A DNA stretch of 64,000 nucleotides, taken from contig JALMLS010000278.1 of NCBI GenBank assembly GCA_038496445.1, forward strand, positions 1 to 64,000, written 5' to 3'. The DNA comes from Trichosphaerium sp. ATCC 40318 (lineage: Eukaryota; Protista; Tubulinea). Below, one piece after another: positions 12,310-58,111 of the stretch; positions within the stretch are counted from its first letter, which is position 1, and each line of letters opens with the position of its first letter. Made by a program: the position numbers and the translations under genes. The notes under the pieces are model-generated. The model saw only the letters and a program-made list of their open reading frames with translations, had not been told where the DNA came from and made no database searches.

Positions 12310-15300
12310 TTACACGATTGCAGGATAGCTGTAATTTGAGGTAAAGCTTGTTCGCCAATAGCAAAGAGCTCCTGAAGTGCAAGACCAGCATCTATAGAAG
12401 TGCGTTAGCTTAACATGGTATCACAGTGCTCAACACTTAGTTCAAACACCAAAAACGTACCAGCGAAATGAAAGAACTCAGTCGCATAATCTAGAGCTGA
12501 GTACTTTACGACGTCGTTACGAGAGGATAAGCACTCCATGTAAACACCAACTATCCTGTCCGTTTCCCTAAGTTTTGGGTTAAACACAATTCACACTTAC
12601 AGTTGTTCGCTATTATGGCTGAAAAACTACAAAGGTACCTCAAATCCTCGTATAGGTAACGCAGTGACAACGAATAAGCTAGGTTTCTCAACGTCGCTGT
12701 AGGAACTAGTTCGTTACCAATACTTGCTGTATTATCAAGGTTCAAGAACGGTGTGAGATACATCACGAACTCTCGTAGAACAATAGGATGAACAACCTAA
12801 TAATTTTTTTAGTTTTGAAAACTACAAAAGCAAATATCACAAGTACGTACACTGGCCTTGTCCAGTTCTTTTAGAGCTGACACGCGGTTATCCATACTAC
12901 AATTTCGCTCCAAATCCAAAGCGTTCTTTATCACAGCCTTTTTATCGTCTGCAAACGGACTACGAAGCGCAGGAGGTGACCCATTAGCACCATCTACAAG
13001 CCATCGAAGCTGTTTAATTGCAGGAAATAAGTCAGCCACCCGTCTAAGCGTCTTGTTAATCAATGGCGGTCTAGAGCATATTGCGTACGATATGAATGAC
13101 GAATACTTTACTAGTGATTTATGTTGTGGTATTTCAAGCTTCAAGTGGCATAAGAATTGCGCAATCTTGAGAACCAGGTTCTAATACACAGTCAGTACCT
13201 TTGACACAGGTCTTAGAAGCTCGTACACGTAGTTGACTATGGTTGTAAATAGTGTTGGCAAGAAATTCAAGATACTCTCTTAAAATGAGTTCCAAGTGTT
13301 TACTCTGTAATAACATAAGCTTTAATATTGTAGCGTATCCATACCTTGAACAAAAACGGACGCATTACATCCATAATACCAAGAACGTAGGAAAACAGTA
13401 CATGGTACTGAGAACGTACGAACTCGCCTGTAGGAACATGTGTTTTACCATGTAGTAATGCACACAGTGAAGGCAAGTATCGCAGTACTACAGAAGGCGA
13501 GGTAGCTGCTATTTTTCGCAAGCGCACAAAAGCCAATCTTGACAAGTCTACAATACCCAAATTTTGTACAAGTTTATGTATCTTCACGTCAGCCTGGAGA
13601 GAAAATATGTAAGTGATAATTTCATACGGTGATGATCGTACTTTTGAAGATAACGCATCGAACGATGTGGAAAGTAAGTGATCAAGTGTTGGGTTTCTAA
13701 CTTTTCCCAAAGTGCTGGCATTGAAGTACAAGCCTGCAAGTAGCATCATAGCGCCAGTAGGCCTTATGCTCTCCTTAAAGGGTATTAGAGGATAGATAGT
13801 AAGACAAAGATGTACCTCCGTATTAGTAGTTCGTGTGAATATACCAAAGAGTCCATTAAGGGGAAATGTTTTGGATAAAGCCTAGTGCTACGATTAACTA
13901 GGTTCTTGGTTTTTTAAATATTAATAGCGTACTGCTGCTCTAGGGATATCTGAGTGATGCAACAAATAATGAATAAGGTCTTGTAAATGCTTTGGATCAC
14001 TTTTTGTAACACCAAGTAGAAGTTTTAGCCTAAAAATTAATTAATGAGACCGTACAGTTTTAACTGCGTGTAAACTAAGCACCTCTTTTCAACTATAGAA
14101 CCATGGAATTCGTCAACTAAGTTAAGGGGTTAGTATGAGAATTGTGCAAGCTATTTAAAGGAGCACATACGAGAACTTTCTCTAATTTCTTCCAAGGTAA
14201 TATCACACAACTTTAAAATGTTCGCTTGAGTTAATGCATAAACATCTGATTGAGCTTTCAGTTGTGTCTTTGATGCAATGTGAACCCACGACTGAGGTTG
14301 ATACAAATACATAGACACGAATTCTAGAGCAGACGTGGGATTCAACTCCTAGACACAAAGTTAGCAATAATAAATTACAAAAAAAAAATGATGTAACAAA
14401 GTTGCTTGCCTTTAGCGGTGTTCTCATTAATCTATCCATGTATTTCCGTTTTACAGACCACGCTGCTTCATGAACAAGCTTACTTAAAAGTAGTGGTCGT
14501 ATGTTCTTGCCAACATGTGGATCACAACGCTTAAATAGCAAGTCAAAAATTCCCTCGTTTGTCATCCCGCTATCCAGCTTTAAAAGCCATTCAACAAGAA
14601 CTATTGAATATCCAGGAATATCCTCTGCTTCTTGTGTGAACTTGTGCATACTGTTCAAAGTTGAAACAATCCCTGACGTGATTTGAACATTCGAAGATGG
14701 CTGATACGTATCAGGAGCATTCTCACTCATGAAATGAAACGCTTCTCTGACAATTGAAGAAAAATGTGGTGTCTGTTCCTGAAGCAATGTCGTAATGAGT
14801 TTGAAAGTGTCTTCAGCTTCGAAAATAACTCGTTTGTCGCTTGTTTGTAAATGAGAATACAGTATCTGTGCTACGTTTCCTTGATGAGTTTCCGCTAGTT
14901 TTGCGAAGATTACATCTTCTTGAGCAACTTCACCAACGCCTCTAATTGATTCCACAATACCAGTAACTTCTGTGACAGTTTGGAAGAGTTGTAAAGTAAA
15001 GAACTCTGGTTGCTTAAGCAAGAAGCCTTTGAGCTCTTCCAGTATATGTAAGAAAGGCTTGGCATCTCTAGGTGGTGGGAAGCAAAGGCATATACAATTC
15101 AGCAGTGGTATAGAAAAGCACGATTTCTTTAATAGCTCAAGTAAAAGACTATCGCGTTGAGGTGCTGATGCTATACCAAGTTGAAGATATTGTACAATAG
15201 CATCAGCTAACCCAAACTCAGAAGTCAACAATGAAGTATTTAGTTCATTGAGACACCATCCTAAGTAATCATCTCGAAGACTCTCAGCTAATGAATCAGG

Positions 15301-51994: not shown

Positions 51995-52568
51995 AAAATT
52001 CCTGAAGAAGTATAGCATAAAATATTTGATCATTGATCTACTGTACTTTTTGAATATTTGGTGTTCTGAAGCTTCTTGTAATTCACTTGTGCGTTCCGAA
52101 AATAAAGAGAAGAAAAACGTGTCAATCCACTATGAAATATTGCTTCGCAGTTGATAATTGCTCTGCTTTAGTCAGAATATTGTTGTTTGACAATTGCTTT
52201 TTTTTAAAGTGATATTCTTGTTTTTACGAGTATTATGTCCACGTGATCAACTATAAAACGAGCATATGACAATACACTTTCGCAAAAACGATCAAAACTA
52301 TTGTTGTTATTGAACAAGCTGCAAAATATCAATGTCCAATATGGCCCAAGCTCTATGTTTGCTTGCTACGGAACAGGACTTAACTGTTACAGTTGCACGC
52401 GATGCATTTTTTGTACTATGTATTCTGCTAAGTCACTTGTGATCTGGCGTTTATAATATGAGAAAAGGATTATTAATTAAACCGATAGAATTTATTTCCT
52501 GCATATTTCTCTTCGCGTGTTGTTTTTTTTTACCGTTCAAATGAAAAGAGAAAAAAAAGAAAGCGATT

Positions 52569-55205
52569 CTACCACTCTTCGTCATCATCATCAGACCAAT
52601 CACTTCCATCACTTTCATCTTCCATATTATCAGCTCGTAAATTATTTCTTCTGCTCTCTATAGCCTTTGAAAGAATACCTTTTCAAACATTAGAACACGT
52701 GCACAAAATAATTTCTTTTAACGTTAATACGTACCTGCAATACCGCTCAATTGACTGTTATCAAGCTTCTCAAGAGAAACATCCTTTGGATCCACCTAGG
52801 CATAGAATGTTAGTAATTTAAGCTCGTTATGAATGAAGCTTAAAAAGGTAACTGAATTCTTAGATAGTACTCACGTGTTTAAGTTTGACACCAGAAGCGA
52901 TCTCCTAATTGGAAATAAATATTACGAATTAACTAGATATTATAGAAGAAATAACGTACGCCCAATAAACCACCACGAGGAGCGGCAGGTTGTTTATCTT
53001 CATGTTCAACATGAGCTAACTTTTTACCCTTTAATTGATCAGCCAAACTTCCTCCGCTTGGAGCTACAGCTGCAGGTGGAGGTGGTGGAGGCGCTGGAGC
53101 ATTGGCATCAGCCTCTATGGCTGGAGGTGGTGGCGGCGGTGTTGGAGCGTTAGGATCTGGAGCAGTATCGACACCTACATCCTTTCCAAGAACAGGAGCT
53201 TTTTTGGCTGGCCTCTTTTTGCTGCGTTACAAGTTAGTATTACAATTACAAAGTTTTCTCCTTACGATCCTGGCTTTGGTGGTGCTGGTGGTGGAGGTAA
53301 TGATTTTTCGCCGGTAGGTGGAGGTGGAGGAGTAGCCATATCCTAAGAAAAAATAAGTTTCCGTGTTCTAATATATTGTTATAGTCTTACAGCTTCTCCT
53401 ACGCCACCATCTGCTGTTTGTTCAGCTACAATACCAAGTACCTAAAGAATAAGTATTAATAACCCGACAATATTTTTCACGTGAAAGACACGTGATTTTA
53501 TACCAGTCTAGCAACTTCAGGATCTAAAACGCAAAAAATTAGCTGAAAGCCACAGTGTTTTTTTTTGCTTACTCTGCGCCTCCTTTTTAGAAATACCGGC
53601 TTCTTTGAATAACTGCTTCCACTCTGGTGGCATATCTTTGATCTATGTTTTATAAGGTTCAAACTCGCTTATTCTTATCAACAAACCTCGAATCCTCCAG
53701 TTTTGGAATCAAAGCCAATATGTGTTGTTCTTTTGAATTCTCGAGGTGCCGATAGAGTAACTATTCAAACTTTCTTTTAGCGTATCTCATTTCTAAATTA
53801 AAACATTCGCTGGTTGACATACATCCGACTGCTACTTTGATAGCCTTCAATGCTTCTATAAATTCTCGTAATTCTTTGGATGTTTTACCCCACTCCATGA
53901 CTAAAATTAATAAAATTAGTCAAAAAAACCGGCGACATAGTTTGCGAGTTTGTTACGTACATTCACTTCTCTCTATTGCTCCATTTTTATTTGTATCGAC
54001 TTTTTTTAATACTACGTCAACGTAATTTTCTAGAGGATCCTTCTGTTTGCTCGCTACGGTTCGAAAACTTAGAACAATAAAACTTTAAAATAAACAAAGT
54101 ACATTTTCCTTTTGTAGCCCATTTTGGAAGCGTTATTGTGCTTACATCTTCGACTTCCTCAACGTGATTTGCTGGAGCGTATCCATGAGTCTTTCCCTTT
54201 TGAGTCCACCACCAACTTTCTGTATTCTCATTAGCTGAATCCAAGCACTGAAAAAAAAAAACCAAAAAGGCCGTAAGAGGCACCAATCGGTAAAGAAAAT
54301 ACAAAGGAAAAGTAACAATGCGCCCTTGTATTAATAGGAATAAGAGGATACTGTTTTGTTGGGTTTATAACGGTTTTAGAAAAAGATGTGAAGAGTGAGC
54401 AGTACCATCATTCTTTGCTTTTAGAATCATGATATCGCCAGCTTTGAAAGACAACTCTTGGTCTCCACCAGCGTCGTAATCAAAGTTAGCTTTTAAATAA
54501 GTCACAGAACCATCAGCTACAGCCTAAGAATAACATGTCAAAAGGACATGGTAACAATTGAAACCCCAAATGAACAACGAACGAAAAAGCGATTGATTTA
54601 AAAAAGTTACGTTTAGTTTTTTTCTTCAAAGGCGCACGTGCGCACTGATACATTACCTTTTGTTTCTTCTGTTTAGGTATGTAGGGTTCAAATAACTTTG
54701 ATGAAAGAATAGAGGCCAATTCTTTTTTAGATATAGCTCCAGTACCACTAGTATTAAACATCTTGAAGAGAACTAAAACACAAAAGAATTAAATTTAGAA
54801 AAAAAAAAGAGAAAACACCCTAAAACCCCACGTGATAACTTTGAACAATAATTTCCCGGTTCATGCGTACACTCAATCTTCTCCTTCTTTGTTCCCTTCT
54901 TGATTATAGCGAAGCCTGTTGCCCAATCCTCAAACACGAGCATCTTTTTACCGCAACATAGTCTCTTATAAAACCTCTTTGATAGAGTAGGGTACTCTGT
55001 TAAGAAGGCTTTACAGAAAGTCTTCTCATCAATTACTCCCTTTTTATTACATTGCGCTTGGAACTTCTCTCCGAGATCCTTTAGTTCAAACTCATCGACT
55101 TTTGATAGACGTTAGCTAAAATAAAGGAGAATCTATGATAAAACAAAAGAGAGGGTATGTACATCTCTTCTTGGCTATTTCGGGTACAACTTGCTTGCCA
55201 CCCAT
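52569..55205 (-). CDS. WASP-like nucleation-promoting factor with N-terminal myristoyl-EF-hand (NCS/CnB-like) and SH3 domains
   Basis: Spliced: MGGKQ..; KGTKKEKIEFLFKMFNTSGTGAISKKEL (EF3); KANFDYDAGGDQELSFKAGD..SWWW..GYAPANHV (SH3); DTNKNGAIERSE (EF4); LSAPREFKRTTHIGFD..MPPEWKQLFKEAGIS (CRIB/GBD); poly-Pro; two WH2; ILSKAIESRR (C); DESDGSDWSDDDDEEW* (A). Confidence 0.85.
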
Positions 55206-55675
55206 CGCTCCTGTAACCAGATTGGTTCACACCAGACCTTACAAGACTAAAGTAGGATAAAACACAAAACGAAAAAAAAAGCAGCAAATACGAATAGTGG
55301 TCACGTGATTATTTGATGAGCTTTTTCCTTTCAAAGTAAGTCGGTTTTCAACTTTTACGGTAAACGTAATCGCTGAATCCAGCTCAACCAGTTAAGGTAA
55401 TGTCGTGAAGTAGTGTCTCAAAAATAATGCAAAATGGAGACAATGAAGAAGTTGCTAAAATGTCTATGATATGGATAGTACTTTTATCTTTTCGTTGGCC
55501 TTTTACAGTAGCATTGGTACTTCTTGGACATACTTACAACCAAGAAAATTTTATAGAAGACCCAGAGAGGGTTGTACCAATCGTACTTTCACAATTTACT
55601 CCAATTGTACTCCGTGGGTAACAAAGAGTCCTGGAATTCTTGCTGTCAGAAAGGCAAAGTGCGAATTTCGTGTAT

Positions 55676-56879
55676 TCATACACTTGTTACATTTGGATCC
55701 ATAGAAAATATAGCAGCAATGGCAAGGTGATCTGAAGGGTAATATGCTGCAGGTAATCTCTCAGGAAGTGATTCCTTCTTTGGGATTTCAAGAACTTCAC
55801 AAAGACCTAACTCTTTAGGATTATAAAATATATAATCAATAGTATGACAAAGCTCAACCGCTAGAAACACAACAGACGTAAGAATCGTTTAAAACTTGTT
55901 TAGTAAAGTATCTTACCTCGCTTCTTGAACGTAGAGAACTCTGAGCGCTCCGTAGCTCCATAACACGACGTCAAAGGACCAATAGGTTGCGTACTGCAAA
56001 AAAAAATAAGTAAAACAATGACGTGACTTGATGCAAACTTACTGGGTTTTATCGCCAATAGTAACGCTTCCTTTGGTAACCAGAGTATGTACTAAGCTAT
56101 CTGGAGTAGCATTGAAATCGCCAAGGACAATAACAGGTAGTTGCTCGGTGTTATACTTGTGAATTTGTTTCAACAAAATATTTCCTTGACGCGATCGTTT
56201 CTCGCATAATCCTGGACCCATCTTCGCTTTCAAGTGTGTAAGAGCAACACATAATCCCTAAGTACAGTTTAAGCATAATGAAGATGATCAACAAGTACTT
56301 TGTGATTGCTTTTTGTAGGAACCAAAGTGGCGATTATTGCAACCTGTGATGCTCCTTTATCTCCAAGGTCCGTGTATTTTACGTCCAACTTGCTTTTAAG
56401 CGTAAAAGATGAGGTGTCATAAAACAAAGCGCAACCATCGTATGAACCGCCTCCTTTTTTGTGAAATACACCCGCGTATCCTTTTATGGTTAATGGGAAT
56501 CACGAATAGCATGTACCTTTAGGTTTTAGCGCTGTTTCAAAATAATTAAACTTATCGCATTCTTCTAGCGCTATAATATCGTGATGGTGTTCGCATATCG
56601 CAGCTAATACCATTGGGCCTCTATTAAACCGTTTTTAGTTTTGTGTTTTACGTAGACTGTTCGCCTAATACCTTCTATCCCATGGTAAAACTGACTGATC
56701 AGTATGAGGGAATGCTAGTTTGCCATGCATAGAGGATTGAGACAAAGAATCAGCCAAGACGTTAAATTGCAGCACAGATACTTTATCAGCTAATAAACGT
56801 TAGTTCGCGTTAACCATACATACGTTCTACCATTGCTAGTTGCTAATTTTCGAAATGATCGAGCTACCAACGTGGTCAT
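55676..56879 (-). CDS. NOCT: Nocturnin/CCR4-like EEP-family phosphatase
   Basis: VLQFNVLADSL, DIIALEECD, DGCALFY, THLKAK, VLGDFNATPD, TIDYIFY, YPSDHL. Confidence 0.85.
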
Positions 56880-57238: not shown

Positions 57239-58111
57239 TCAATGTTGCTTTTCGCAAAAATGAATCGCCATCGGACCATTTCCTGTGGACTGATACCATA
57301 TTGTAAATATCGTACAACTCTTTCTGTCCCACAAAGGCCACTCGCGTTGTAAGTATCTGTATAAACAATGTTCATCACGTGGTACAAAGTACTTGAACGT
57401 AAATATGCGGCTTGCTTTGCAACAACGAACTGTTTTGTTCGTATCTCTAAATAAACATTTGAAGCAGTAGCTCTTGTTATTCAATGAACAACATCCATCT
57501 TGCTCGCCGCATTCTGTACATAGTAGTTTGATAACTTGTTTCTCTGATAAATACTCTTGTCTTTCAATGTATTGACTAGTGCACTCTCTACAAAGTCTCA
57601 TAGCATCAACCACTGTAGACACGAAAGCAGAGCATATGTGGCATTTCATACCATAAGGTAGACTAACACTGTCAAGATGTGCGAGTTTGTTCCACTTTTC
57701 TGCACTGCCAGGTTTGTAAGGACAGCGTTGATGCTGTGATTTATGAACGCGACAAGCTTTATCAAAAGTAATCATGGCATCCTGGAACGAAAGCTTTTGA
57801 CCATGGAACTGCTCGTTGTATCTTGAATAAACGAATACATATCTGTTATCCCTGAGAATCGGTACAAGCATTGGTAGACGTTTAGGGCATAAAATAGAGA
57901 GGTAGTGAAGGTTTGGAAGCAAGTTATCATCATCACCAATAAAGTCATTTACATACTGTAGGCAATCTTTACTTGTTAATTTAAGCTGTATAATACTCCA
58001 AATGTTTGTACGGAGAAGTATATCGAGTATTATAACAAAGGCATCGTAATAAAGTGTTGAGAGCGTTACCACATCTTCTTCAAACTCTGGCTGTTTTTTA
58101 TTAGAATTCAT
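57239..58111 (-). CDS. Intronless hypothetical protein, F-box-like N-terminus and multiple CxxC motifs
   Basis: 290-aa uninterrupted ORF; YDAFVIILDIL..QLKLTSK; CHIC, CREC, CTEC, CFKC. Confidence 0.6.
   Translation of the reverse strand: MNSNKKQPEFEEDVVTLSTLYYDAFVIILDILLRTNIWSIIQLKLTSKDCLQYVNDFIGDDDNLLPNLHYLSILCPKRLPMLVPILRDNRYVFVYSRYNEQFHGQKLSFQDAMITFDKACRVHKSQHQRCPYKPGSAEKWNKLAHLDSVSLPYGMKCHICSAFVSTVVDAMRLCRECTSQYIERQEYLSEKQVIKLLCTECGEQDGCCSLNNKSYCFKCLFRDTNKTVRCCKASRIFTFKYFVPRDEHCLYRYLQREWPLWDRKSCTIFTIWYQSTGNGPMAIHFCEKQH

What the first reader, a model, noticed from the sequence alone, without database searches (positions are those of the whole stretch)
52569..55205. Calcium-sensor WASP: myristoyl-EF-hand module with inserted SH3 replaces WH1
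Seen: the junctions I traced from the ATG through the CRIB splice in frame with GT-AG sites. The order is MG- start, NCS/calcineurin-B-like EF module, SH3 inserted between degenerate EF3 (NTSGTGAISKKE) and canonical EF4 (DTNKNGAIERSE), then CRIB/GBD (first His replaced by Arg), poly-Pro, two WH2, C helix and a Trp-ending acidic tail. Known: WASPs use WH1-basic-GBD-PRD-VCA to activate Arp2/3, and NCS proteins use Ca2+-myristoyl switches. Inference: one polypeptide coupling Ca2+, membrane targeting and Rac/Cdc42 input to branched actin, possibly with SH3-PRD self-regulation. I know of no described nucleation-promoting factor with this architecture.
Basis: partly seen in the sequence, partly recalled or inferred. 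Interest (0 to 1): 0.88.

Follow-up and report, generated by a model that had tools for sequence, protein, structure and literature searches.

The report
EF-hand/SH3-headed WASP-like actin nucleation factor
An amoeba-type protist expresses one gene whose protein joins a calcium-sensor-like EF-hand domain (with an SH3 domain looped into it) to the GTPase-binding and Arp2/3-activating parts of WASP; relatives exist in a few other protists and I found no published description, but calcium control of actin branching is inferred, not shown.

Summary
The minus strand 55205-52569 carries one 16-exon gene. Spliced transcript contigs from three runs (three studies) cross every exon, so the EF/SH3 part and the CRIB-VCA part are one mRNA. 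Two junctions differ from my first sequence-only model. The corrected 515-aa product is identical to a complete MMETSP transcript ORF.

Domain order:
- MG start
- four-EF-hand domain of NCS/calcineurin-B type (KChIP1 Z 17.3), with only EF4 canonical
- SH3 looped in between EF3 and EF4
- CRIB (first His is Arg) plus WASP-type autoinhibitory helices
- poly-proline
- two WH2, C helix and acidic Trp tail

The GBD and WH2-C-A parts align with a WH1-bearing WASP.

Five homologous sequences were found, representing four genes. Two genes carry the SH3, one from the amoebozoan Trichosphaerium. Two lack it. All start with MG and keep a canonical EF4.

By definition it belongs to Kollmar's "WAWH" class (WASP without WH1) but fits none of its three subtypes. 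No paper with this architecture turned up.

Myristoylation is doubtful because the classic motif is not met. Ca2+ control, GTPase binding and Arp2/3 activation are inferred. Unchecked notes from this scan report a second copy on another piece of this genome.

Verdict: a real new variant of a known kind.

The parts
52569..55205 (-). Whole coding region, 16 exons, 515 aa. Exons (high-low): 55205-55163, 55098-54871, 54772-54657, 54523-54406, 54219-54103, 54053-53961, 53900-53823, 53760-53687, 53642-53573, 53523-53504, 53441-53391, 53342-53266, 53221-52960, 52904-52875, 52795-52735, 52678-52569.
   Evidence: Spliced contigs of X1, X2 and X8 show all 15 joints with CT..AC ends on the + strand. The translation equals P0012.
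55164..55205 (-). N-terminus MGGKQVVPEIAKKR: invariant Met-Gly start with basic residues; candidate lipidation or membrane patch.
   Evidence: MG is invariant in the homologues aligned. The PS00008 pattern is not met. An in-frame stop lies 8 codons upstream.
54762..55169 (-). EF1-EF2 lobe (aa 13-94); both loops are degenerate; USP32_N-like.
   Evidence: Pfam USP32_N 29.3 bits against a cut-off of 27. KChIP1 matches residues 11-114 by sequence, E 1e-8.
54720..54755 (-). EF3 loop NTSGTGAISKKE (aa 97-108), near-canonical with Asn instead of Asp at position 1.
   Evidence: Pfam EF-hand_6 34.3 bits. PS00018 is not matched.
54152..54505 (-). SH3 domain (aa 136-191) on exons 4 and 5, inserted in the EF3-EF4 linker.
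   Evidence: Pfam SH3_1 and SH3_2 above cut-off. Foldseek TM 0.9 to myosin-IB and Grb2 SH3 domains. The region is absent from homologues P0013 and P0004.
53962..53997 (-). EF4 loop DTNKNGAIERSE (aa 227-238), canonical Ca2+ loop.
   Evidence: Matches PS00018. EF4 is canonical in all six family sequences checked. Pfam EF-hand_1 35.5 bits.
53714..53755 (-). CRIB motif LSAPREFKRTTHIG (aa 267-280); first His replaced by Arg275.
   Evidence: Pfam PBD E 4e-14. Alignments to PAK1 and WASP CRIB.
53412..53630 (-). WASP-type autoinhibitory helices of the GBD (aa 294-329), on exons 9-11.
   Evidence: Aligns with WASP/N-WASP GBD through the segment ...PEVARLVLGIVAEQ. The fragment model's best match is autoinhibited WASP 1EJ5, Z 6.5.
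53062..53342 (-). Proline-rich region (aa 337-415) with SH3-ligand-like motifs KSLPPPP and PPAPPK.
   Evidence: Direct reading and regular-expression scan. Disordered in the model.
53008..53058 (-). WH2-like motif 1 (aa 417-433, SLADQLKGKKLAHV).
   Evidence: Q424, K429, L430 and H432 are invariant in the family. A helix is predicted at 421-426. No Pfam hit on its own.
52790..52986 (-). WH2 motif 2 (aa 441-461, GGLLGEIASGVKLKHV), split over exons 13-15.
   Evidence: Pfam WH2 21.4 bits against a cut-off of 23.1. Aligns with the WH2 of a WH1-bearing WASP, P0011.
52629..52759 (-). Central (C) amphipathic helix (aa 472-496).
   Evidence: A485 and R490 are invariant in 9 CRIB-VCA proteins. Helix 472-496 has pLDDT of about 70-74.
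52572..52628 (-). Acidic tail (aa 497-515) with Trp507 and terminal Trp515.
   Evidence: W507 is invariant in alignment A4.

Best explanation
This is an expressed member of the WASP family that lacks WH1, that is, the 'WAWH' class. Its head is a complete four-EF-hand domain of the NCS/calcineurin-B/CIB type.

Shown:
- One mRNA encodes the whole protein.
- The domain order is as described.
- The head has the NCS-type fold.
- The SH3 sits as an excursion in the EF3-EF4 linker.
- The GBD and the WH2-C-A tail are homologous to those of a WH1-bearing WASP.
- The fusion is conserved in other protists.

Inferred mechanism:
1. The VCA tail delivers actin monomers and activates Arp2/3.
2. At rest, the C helix is held on the GBD helices, as in autoinhibited WASP.
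3. A Rho-family GTPase at the CRIB helps release it.
4. The EF-hand head abuts the CRIB: about 10 residues separate its last helix from the motif. The head binds Ca2+ at EF4, perhaps weakly at EF3.
5. Through that binding the head either targets the protein to a membrane or partner, or shifts the GBD-C equilibrium. Ca2+ transients would thus feed directly into branched-actin assembly.
6. The SH3 adds a proline-motif input, from a partner or from the protein's own PRD.
For: - Single spliced transcript contigs in three runs; identical MMETSP ORF.
- Pfam architecture.
- Head fold: KChIP1 Z 17.3, rmsd 2.7 over 167 of 181 residues, model residues 4-261. Calaxin, CBL2, CHP1, calcineurin B and CIB1-3 score Z 14-17. 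KChIP1 also matches by sequence, E 1e-8. Atlas neighbours are calcineurin B and GCAP1.
- EF4 is canonical in all six family sequences.
- The GBD aligns with WASP through the autoinhibitory helices.
- BLASTP against a WH1+PBD protein, P0011: GBD E 2e-12, WH2-C-A E 2e-7.
- Invariant CRIB Pro and His, C-region Ala and Arg, and acidic Trp in 9 CRIB-VCA proteins.
- The GBD-VCA fragment model best matches autoinhibited WASP 1EJ5 over both the GBD and the C helix (Z 6.5, 88 of 107 residues).
- On the GBD-VCA part alone, the five EF-headed proteins form one clade, support 93/95.
- In mammals the four-EF-hand protein CIB1 binds the WASP WH1 domain in trans (PMC4266975). This is a functional precedent for pairing such a sensor with WASP.
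Against: - Only one of four EF loops is canonical here. EF3 has Asn at position 1 and EF2 is deleted.
- Many NCS-like proteins bind their targets without a Ca2+ switch.
- The classic myristoylation motif is not met.
- The first CRIB His, important in PAK and WASP, is Arg here and varies in the family: R, R, H, T, A.
- WH2 scores are below or near Pfam's cut-off. The VCA alone finds nothing in the PDB by sequence.
- The 1EJ5 match is modest: Z 6.5, rmsd 5.3, pLDDT 66-80.
- There is no biochemical evidence of any kind.
Confidence: 0.6

Rival explanations
1. It has the same architecture and is an Arp2/3 activator, but the EF-hand head is a Ca2+-independent adaptor. It would be a permanently folded NCS-like domain that binds a fixed partner or membrane site. 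That is the targeting job WH1 does through WIP in other WASPs. Calcium would play at most a structural role.
For: EF1 and EF2 are degenerate, and EF3 lacks the position-1 Asp in the window's protein. The N-lobe matches USP32_N, a family of non-canonical EF-like folds. From general knowledge, KChIP and CHP relatives bind their targets constitutively. The number of canonical loops differs between homologues, from 1 to 3.
Against: EF4 stays fully canonical in all six sequences at only about 40% overall identity, and P0014 keeps three canonical loops. That argues for selection on metal binding.
Confidence: 0.25
2. The tail is not a working Arp2/3 activator. The protein would be a Rho-GTPase/Ca2+ scaffold, or a WH2-based actin-monomer binder, whose C and A regions are only relics.
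For: The WH2 Pfam score is under the cut-off. WH2-1 gets no hit. The VCA alone has no PDB sequence hit. No assay exists.
Against: The WH2-C-A tail aligns with that of a WH1-bearing WASP, E 2e-7. The C-region Ala and Arg and the acidic-region Trp are invariant across 9 proteins. The tail is conserved in all full-length family members.
Confidence: 0.1
3. It is an artefact: two neighbouring genes (EF/SH3 and CRIB-VCA) wrongly joined, or a chimeric assembly.
For: None found. The intron between the two halves (53822-53761) would end the frame early if retained. Unspliced fragments occur in run X6.
Against: Three independent transcript contigs cross the 53760/53823 joint and all the others. The intron there is 62 nt, which leaves no room for a promoter, and no Met precedes the CRIB exon. 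Homologues from other organisms carry the same fusion in transcript-derived ORFs.
Confidence: 0.02

Closest known systems
WAWH proteins ('WASP without WH1'; Kollmar et al. 2012, PMC3298513), known from amoebae and Apusozoa
   Same: GBD (CRIB plus autoinhibitory helices), poly-proline region and VCA, with no WH1. Amoeba-type hosts. One labelled homologue here comes from the amoebozoan Trichosphaerium.
   Different: The three published subtypes have no N-terminal domain (I), CxxC motifs plus a coiled coil (II), or an 800-residue charged region (III). None has an EF-hand head or an SH3, and the paper never mentions EF-hand or calcium. The basic region of type I is also missing here.
WASP / N-WASP
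   Same: A GBD that aligns through the autoinhibitory helices; a PRD; two WH2 as in N-WASP; a C helix; an acidic Trp tail.
   Different: No WH1 and no basic region before the CRIB. The first CRIB His is Arg. An NCS-like EF-hand domain with an embedded SH3 takes the N-terminal position.
WAML proteins of Entamoeba (IMD domain - autoinhibitory domain - PRD - VCA; PMC3298513)
   Same: Another case in which a WASP-type tail carries a different membrane- or signal-reading head in place of WH1.
   Different: The head is an IMD/I-BAR domain, and WAML lacks the CRIB. Here the head is EF-hand/SH3 and the CRIB is kept.
NCS / KChIP / calcineurin B / CBL / CIB four-EF-hand sensors
   Same: The whole fold is shared (Z 14-17, about 165 aligned residues). 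It begins at Met-Gly, EF1 is degenerate, and the C-terminal EF loop is canonical.
   Different: Those are free-standing proteins of about 170-200 aa that act on targets in trans, and many have a proven myristoyl group. This one is fused to its presumed target, carries an SH3 between EF3 and EF4, keeps one canonical loop, and does not meet the myristoylation motif. In mammals, CIB1 binds the WASP WH1 domain in trans (PMC4266975).
Domain-in-domain insertions such as the SH3 inside a spectrin repeat of alpha-spectrin (from general knowledge; alpha-spectrin also appeared as a sequence hit over residues 127-258)
   Same: An SH3 sits in a loop of a helical host domain that still folds around it.
   Different: The host fold is different, and I know of no precedent for an insertion inside a paired EF-hand lobe.

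Membership tests
WASP family in the broad sense (PRD + VCA Arp2/3 activators) | WH2 (V) motif(s) | tested here: met
   Pfam WH2 at 441-461, 21.4 bits, just under the cut-off of 23.1. It aligns with the WH2 of the WH1-bearing P0011. The first WH2 is conserved in the family but gets no Pfam hit.
WASP family in the broad sense (PRD + VCA Arp2/3 activators) | Central helix with conserved hydrophobics and Arg, followed by an acidic stretch with Trp | tested here: met
   A485, R490 and W507 are invariant in 9 CRIB-VCA proteins. A helix is predicted at 472-496.
WASP family in the broad sense (PRD + VCA Arp2/3 activators) | Stimulates actin nucleation by Arp2/3 | not testable with these tools
   Needs a pyrene-actin/Arp2/3 assay.
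WASP / N-WASP subfamily | N-terminal WH1 (EVH1) domain | tested here: not met
   No WH1 hit in Pfam. Residues 4-261 fold as a four-EF-hand domain plus SH3.
WASP / N-WASP subfamily | Basic region directly before the CRIB | tested here: not met
   Residues 258-266 read AIKVAVGFT. Lys/Arg clusters lie elsewhere, at 123-129, 203-212 and 362-369.
WASP / N-WASP subfamily | CRIB with both conserved His, plus autoinhibitory helices | tested here: inconclusive
   PBD E 4e-14, and the helices align with WASP. The first His is Arg275. The fragment model matches 1EJ5 at Z 6.5 only.
WAWH (WASP without WH1; PMC3298513) | GBD + PRD + VCA without WH1 | tested here: met
WAWH (WASP without WH1; PMC3298513) | One of the described subtypes I-III | tested here: not met
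   No CxxC/coiled-coil or long charged region is present, and the N-terminal 266 residues are a folded EF-hand/SH3 head.
NCS / calcineurin-B-like four-EF-hand sensors | Compact four-EF-hand fold | tested here: met
   KChIP1 Z 17.3, rmsd 2.7, 167 of 181 residues. Foldseek hits to hippocalcin, NCS-1, recoverin and CnB.
NCS / calcineurin-B-like four-EF-hand sensors | Two or three canonical Ca2+ loops | tested here: not met
   Only EF4 matches PS00018 in the window's protein. Homologue P0014 has three.
NCS / calcineurin-B-like four-EF-hand sensors | N-terminal myristoylation signal | tested here: inconclusive
   Gly2 is invariant, but position 6 is Val, Pro or Ile in all members, so PS00008 is not met. 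It needs an NMT assay or mass spectrometry.
SH3 domain | SH3 fold with ligand-site residues | tested here: met
   SH3_1 and SH3_2 above cut-off. TM about 0.9 to solved SH3 domains. The ALYDY-like FDYD, the WW and the Pro of the PxNY motif are kept; the Tyr of that motif is His.

The most novel reading that the evidence does not exclude
This would be a directly calcium-gated Arp2/3 activator. Ca2+ binding to the fused NCS-like head, about 10 residues from the CRIB, would release or relocate a WASP-type GBD-VCA. Ca2+ spikes would then trigger branched actin with no calmodulin, kinase or separate sensor in between. The embedded SH3 would act as a second latch on the protein's own proline-rich region. 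It would also be a fused counterpart of the mammalian CIB1-WASP pair.
Probability: 0.3. Interest if true: 0.85.

Novelty: new variant of a known kind. Interest (0 to 1): 0.62.

Why it matters
Known WASP-family proteins read membranes, GTPases, phosphoinositides and SH3 adaptors. Calcium reaches them only indirectly. A conserved natural fusion of a calcium-sensor domain to a GBD-VCA would give a simple, testable link between Ca2+ signals and branched-actin assembly in amoeboid cells.

It would also support, in the manner of a Rosetta-stone fusion, the little-studied CIB1-WASP interaction of mammals.

It adds a fourth head type to the WH1-less WASPs. It also shows that an SH3 can be carried inside a paired EF-hand lobe, which is of interest for protein design and domain evolution.

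Tried and rejected
- My first sequence-only exon model was wrong at two junctions and 13 aa short. The transcript contigs corrected it.
- Pfam on single exons gave only weak hits. The whole protein became searchable by reference once P0012 was found.
- The exhaustive HMMER search with the 75-aa exon 2 found only 3 true relatives.
- The word-based searches with P0004, with P0012 residues 1-335 and with alignment A2 added P0007/P0014 and P0016. The family is rare, or the searches are insensitive.
- The metagenome-contig scan with A2 matched 575 patterns but confirmed no relative.
- The ESM Atlas search by features gave no usable hit for P0012 or P0014.
- The VCA alone found nothing in the PDB by sequence. 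Comparison with P0008, an odd fish WASL isoform, was uninformative, so I used the WH1-bearing P0011 instead.
- The tree could not say whether the SH3 was gained or lost. P0012, P0013 and P0004 are unresolved.
- The look-up of encoding contigs has no record of P0012.
- I did not identify the organism independently. 'Marine amoeba' comes from unchecked scan notes plus the MMETSP source and the Trichosphaerium homologue.
- Model coordinates are not readable by scripts, so EF3-EF4 pairing and C-helix docking were judged only through structural matches.
- Two paper or findings searches failed on the sign in 'Arp2/3'.
Full report
**1. What is in the sequence**

The stretch 52569-55205 encodes a gene on the minus strand of an intron-rich eukaryotic genome with about 38% G+C. 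A sequence-only model spliced in frame with GT-AG sites throughout.

I then laid public contigs on 52000-56000. Runs X1, X2 and X8 carry three organism labels and come from three studies. Each holds one contig of 1.5-1.7 kb that skips 14 or 15 introns with CT..AC ends on the + strand, that is, GT..AG on the gene's strand. These contigs run from about 55192/55213 to 52575/52470.

They show that the EF/SH3 half and the CRIB-VCA half are one mRNA.

The contigs also corrected two junctions: intron 4 is 54405-54220 and intron 5 is 54102-54054. The corrected model has 16 exons and 515 aa. It is letter-for-letter identical to P0012, an MMETSP transcript ORF marked complete. Its first 320 residues equal P0001 from a JGI contig.

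The ATG at 55205 follows an in-frame stop 8 codons upstream. All homologues start at the same aligned Met-Gly.

The X8 contig retains intron 1, which would end the frame early. X6, the only run on record as RNA, holds short unspliced pieces. Neither affects the main reading.

**2. Anatomy**

Pfam hits on P0012:

| Family | Residues | Score |
|---|---|---|
| USP32_N | 13-94 | 29.3 bits (cut-off 27) |
| EF-hand_6 | 89-114 | 34.3 bits |
| SH3_1 / SH3_2 | 138-191 | above cut-off |
| EF-hand_1 | 220-242 | 35.5 bits |
| PBD | 268-313 | E 4e-14 |
| WH2 | 441-461 | 21.4 bits (cut-off 23.1) |

The PBD profile runs on across the exon 8/9 joint.

*The head.* Sequence search of the PDB links residues 11-114 to KChIP1, calsenilin and GCAP1, with E down to 1e-8. 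An AlphaFold2 model built on five family sequences is confident over the head: pLDDT 83-91 for residues 10-120, about 85-88 for the SH3, and 75-92 around EF4. Its best structural matches are listed here:
- KChIP1: Z 17.3, rmsd 2.7 Å, 167 of 181 residues, model residues 4-261.
- Calaxin, frequenin/NCS-1, CBL2, SOS3, CHP1, calcineurin B and CIB1-3: Z 14-17.

The Atlas's own model gives the same neighbours. Residues 4-261 are therefore one complete four-EF-hand domain of the NCS/calcineurin-B type. About 78 residues, the SH3 on exons 4-5, loop out between EF3 and EF4. The SH3 itself superposes on solved SH3 domains at TM about 0.9.

*The EF loops.* Only EF4 (DTNKNGAIERSEF, starting at residue 227) fits PROSITE PS00018. 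EF3 (NTSGTGAISKKE) fails only by Asn at position 1. EF2 is deleted relative to homologues, and EF1 is degenerate.

*The N-terminus.* MGGKQVV has the invariant Gly2 and nearby basic residues. It has Val where the classic myristoylation motif needs a small residue, and so do all homologues. Myristoylation is therefore possible but not predicted.

*The GBD.* The CRIB starts about 10 residues after the last helix of the head. It reads LSAPREFKRTTHIG, with Arg in place of the first conserved His. That position varies in the family: R, R, H, T, A. The following helices align with WASP and N-WASP through PEVARLVLGIVAEQ, which is the autoinhibitory part.

*The tail.* A proline-rich region of about 80 residues contains one class-I-like and one class-II-like SH3 ligand motif. 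Two WH2-like motifs, a predicted C helix (472-496) and an acidic tail with Trp507 and Trp515 follow.

*Kinship with WASP.* Against P0011, a JGI protein with WH1 and PBD domains, BLASTP gives E 2e-12 for the GBD and E 2e-7 for WH2-C-A. In an alignment of nine CRIB-VCA proteins, the CRIB Pro and second His, the P..WK.L segment, the C-region Ala and Arg and the acidic Trp are invariant.

A model of the GBD-VCA fragment has modest confidence. Its best match is the autoinhibited WASP structure 1EJ5, over both the GBD and the C helix: Z 6.5, rmsd 5.3 Å, 88 of 107 residues. This is weak support that the C helix can dock on the GBD.

**3. Relatives**

The same fusion occurs in other organisms, at about 35-42% identity.
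- With the SH3 at the same site:
  - P0014, 525 aa, from two JGI samples, with three canonical EF loops.
  - P0016/P0023, 540/547 aa, from Trichosphaerium sp., Amoebozoa.
- Without the SH3: P0013 (437 aa) and P0004 (430 aa), from EukProt transcriptomes.

On the GBD-VCA part alone, the five EF-headed proteins group together with support 93/95. This fits a single origin of the fusion. Whether the SH3 was gained or lost is unresolved.

The searches also turned up other WH1-less CRIB-VCA proteins with different modules:
- SH3 at the N-terminus.
- A C1/FYVE-like zinc finger plus an SH3.
- A Tudor-like domain.

Unchecked notes of this scan report several more VCA fusions, and a second copy of this very architecture on another piece of the same genome. 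I did not test these notes.

**4. How it most likely works**

See the best explanation.
- Shown: the single transcript, the architecture, the fold of the head, homology of the GBD and VCA to WASP, and conservation of the fusion.
- Inferred: Arp2/3 activation, autoinhibition, GTPase release, Ca2+ binding at EF4 and its coupling to activity or targeting, lipidation, and any SH3-PRD contact.

The strongest argument for metal binding is that EF4 stays canonical in all six sequences at about 40% identity. The strongest argument against a classic switch is that the other three loops are degenerate in the window's protein.

A useful parallel comes from mammals. There, CIB1, a free four-EF-hand protein of the same structural group, binds the WH1 domain of WASP (PMC4266975). 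Here such a domain is fused where WH1 would be.

**5. Comparison with what is known, and novelty**

Kollmar et al. 2012 (PMC3298513) define WAWH as WASP without WH1, found in amoebae and Apusozoa, with three subtypes. They define WAML as having an IMD head. Neither EF-hand nor calcium is mentioned in that paper.

Full-text searches for combinations of WASP, VCA, WH2, CRIB, EF-hand and Amoebozoa found no description of this architecture. The homologues in public collections are unnamed ORFs. No large Atlas cluster resembles them.

I therefore file it as a new variant (subtype) of a known kind. It is not categorically new. Head-swapping on a GBD-PRD-VCA chassis is already known in amoebae.

**6. 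Verdict**

- Observation: confirmed.
- Interpretation: partly supported. The architecture holds. The myristoyl switch, Ca2+ gating and SH3 self-regulation are unproven.
- Interest: 0.62.

Noticed in passing
window 1-64000; near the gene at 52240, 52696, 52872, 53478, 53489, 54635, 54829, 55302: The palindrome CACGTG occurs 72 times in the window against 10.6 expected (largest shuffle 19). Near this gene the copies lie mostly in introns 2, 3, 10 and 15, at the exon 14 donor, and about 100 nt upstream of the ATG. Its meaning is unknown.
   Followed up: partly
window 55099-55162 (intron 1): The X8 transcript contig runs unspliced through intron 1, which would stop translation after about 30 codons. 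X1 and X2 splice it out. This may be pre-mRNA or a retained-intron form.
   Followed up: no
P0003 versus P0013 (EukProt isoforms i4 and i2 of one Trinity gene): The SH3-less homologue has a 274-aa isoform that ends just after the GBD and lacks the PRD-VCA. A head-plus-GBD-only product may exist.
   Followed up: no
P0025, P0018, P0009, P0010 (JGI/Logan proteins): These are other WH1-less CRIB/GBD-VCA proteins with unusual modules: an N-terminal SH3; a C1/FYVE-like zinc finger plus an internal SH3; and a Tudor-like domain between the PRD and the VCA.
   Followed up: partly
window 55397-56000 and beyond: A separate transcript contig of a neighbouring gene starts less than 200 nt from the 5' end of this mRNA (55213). 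Intergenic space here is very short.
   Followed up: no
window 57239-58111 (-) and 14203-15231 (-): These are the only two ORFs of 220 aa or more in the window. Neither has a Pfam match.
   Followed up: partly
window 53126-53295 and 54649-54669: Contigs of X2 and X6 match only short pieces here and then run on into unlike sequence. They are probably other transcripts that share proline-rich or short words, not isoforms of this gene.
   Followed up: no
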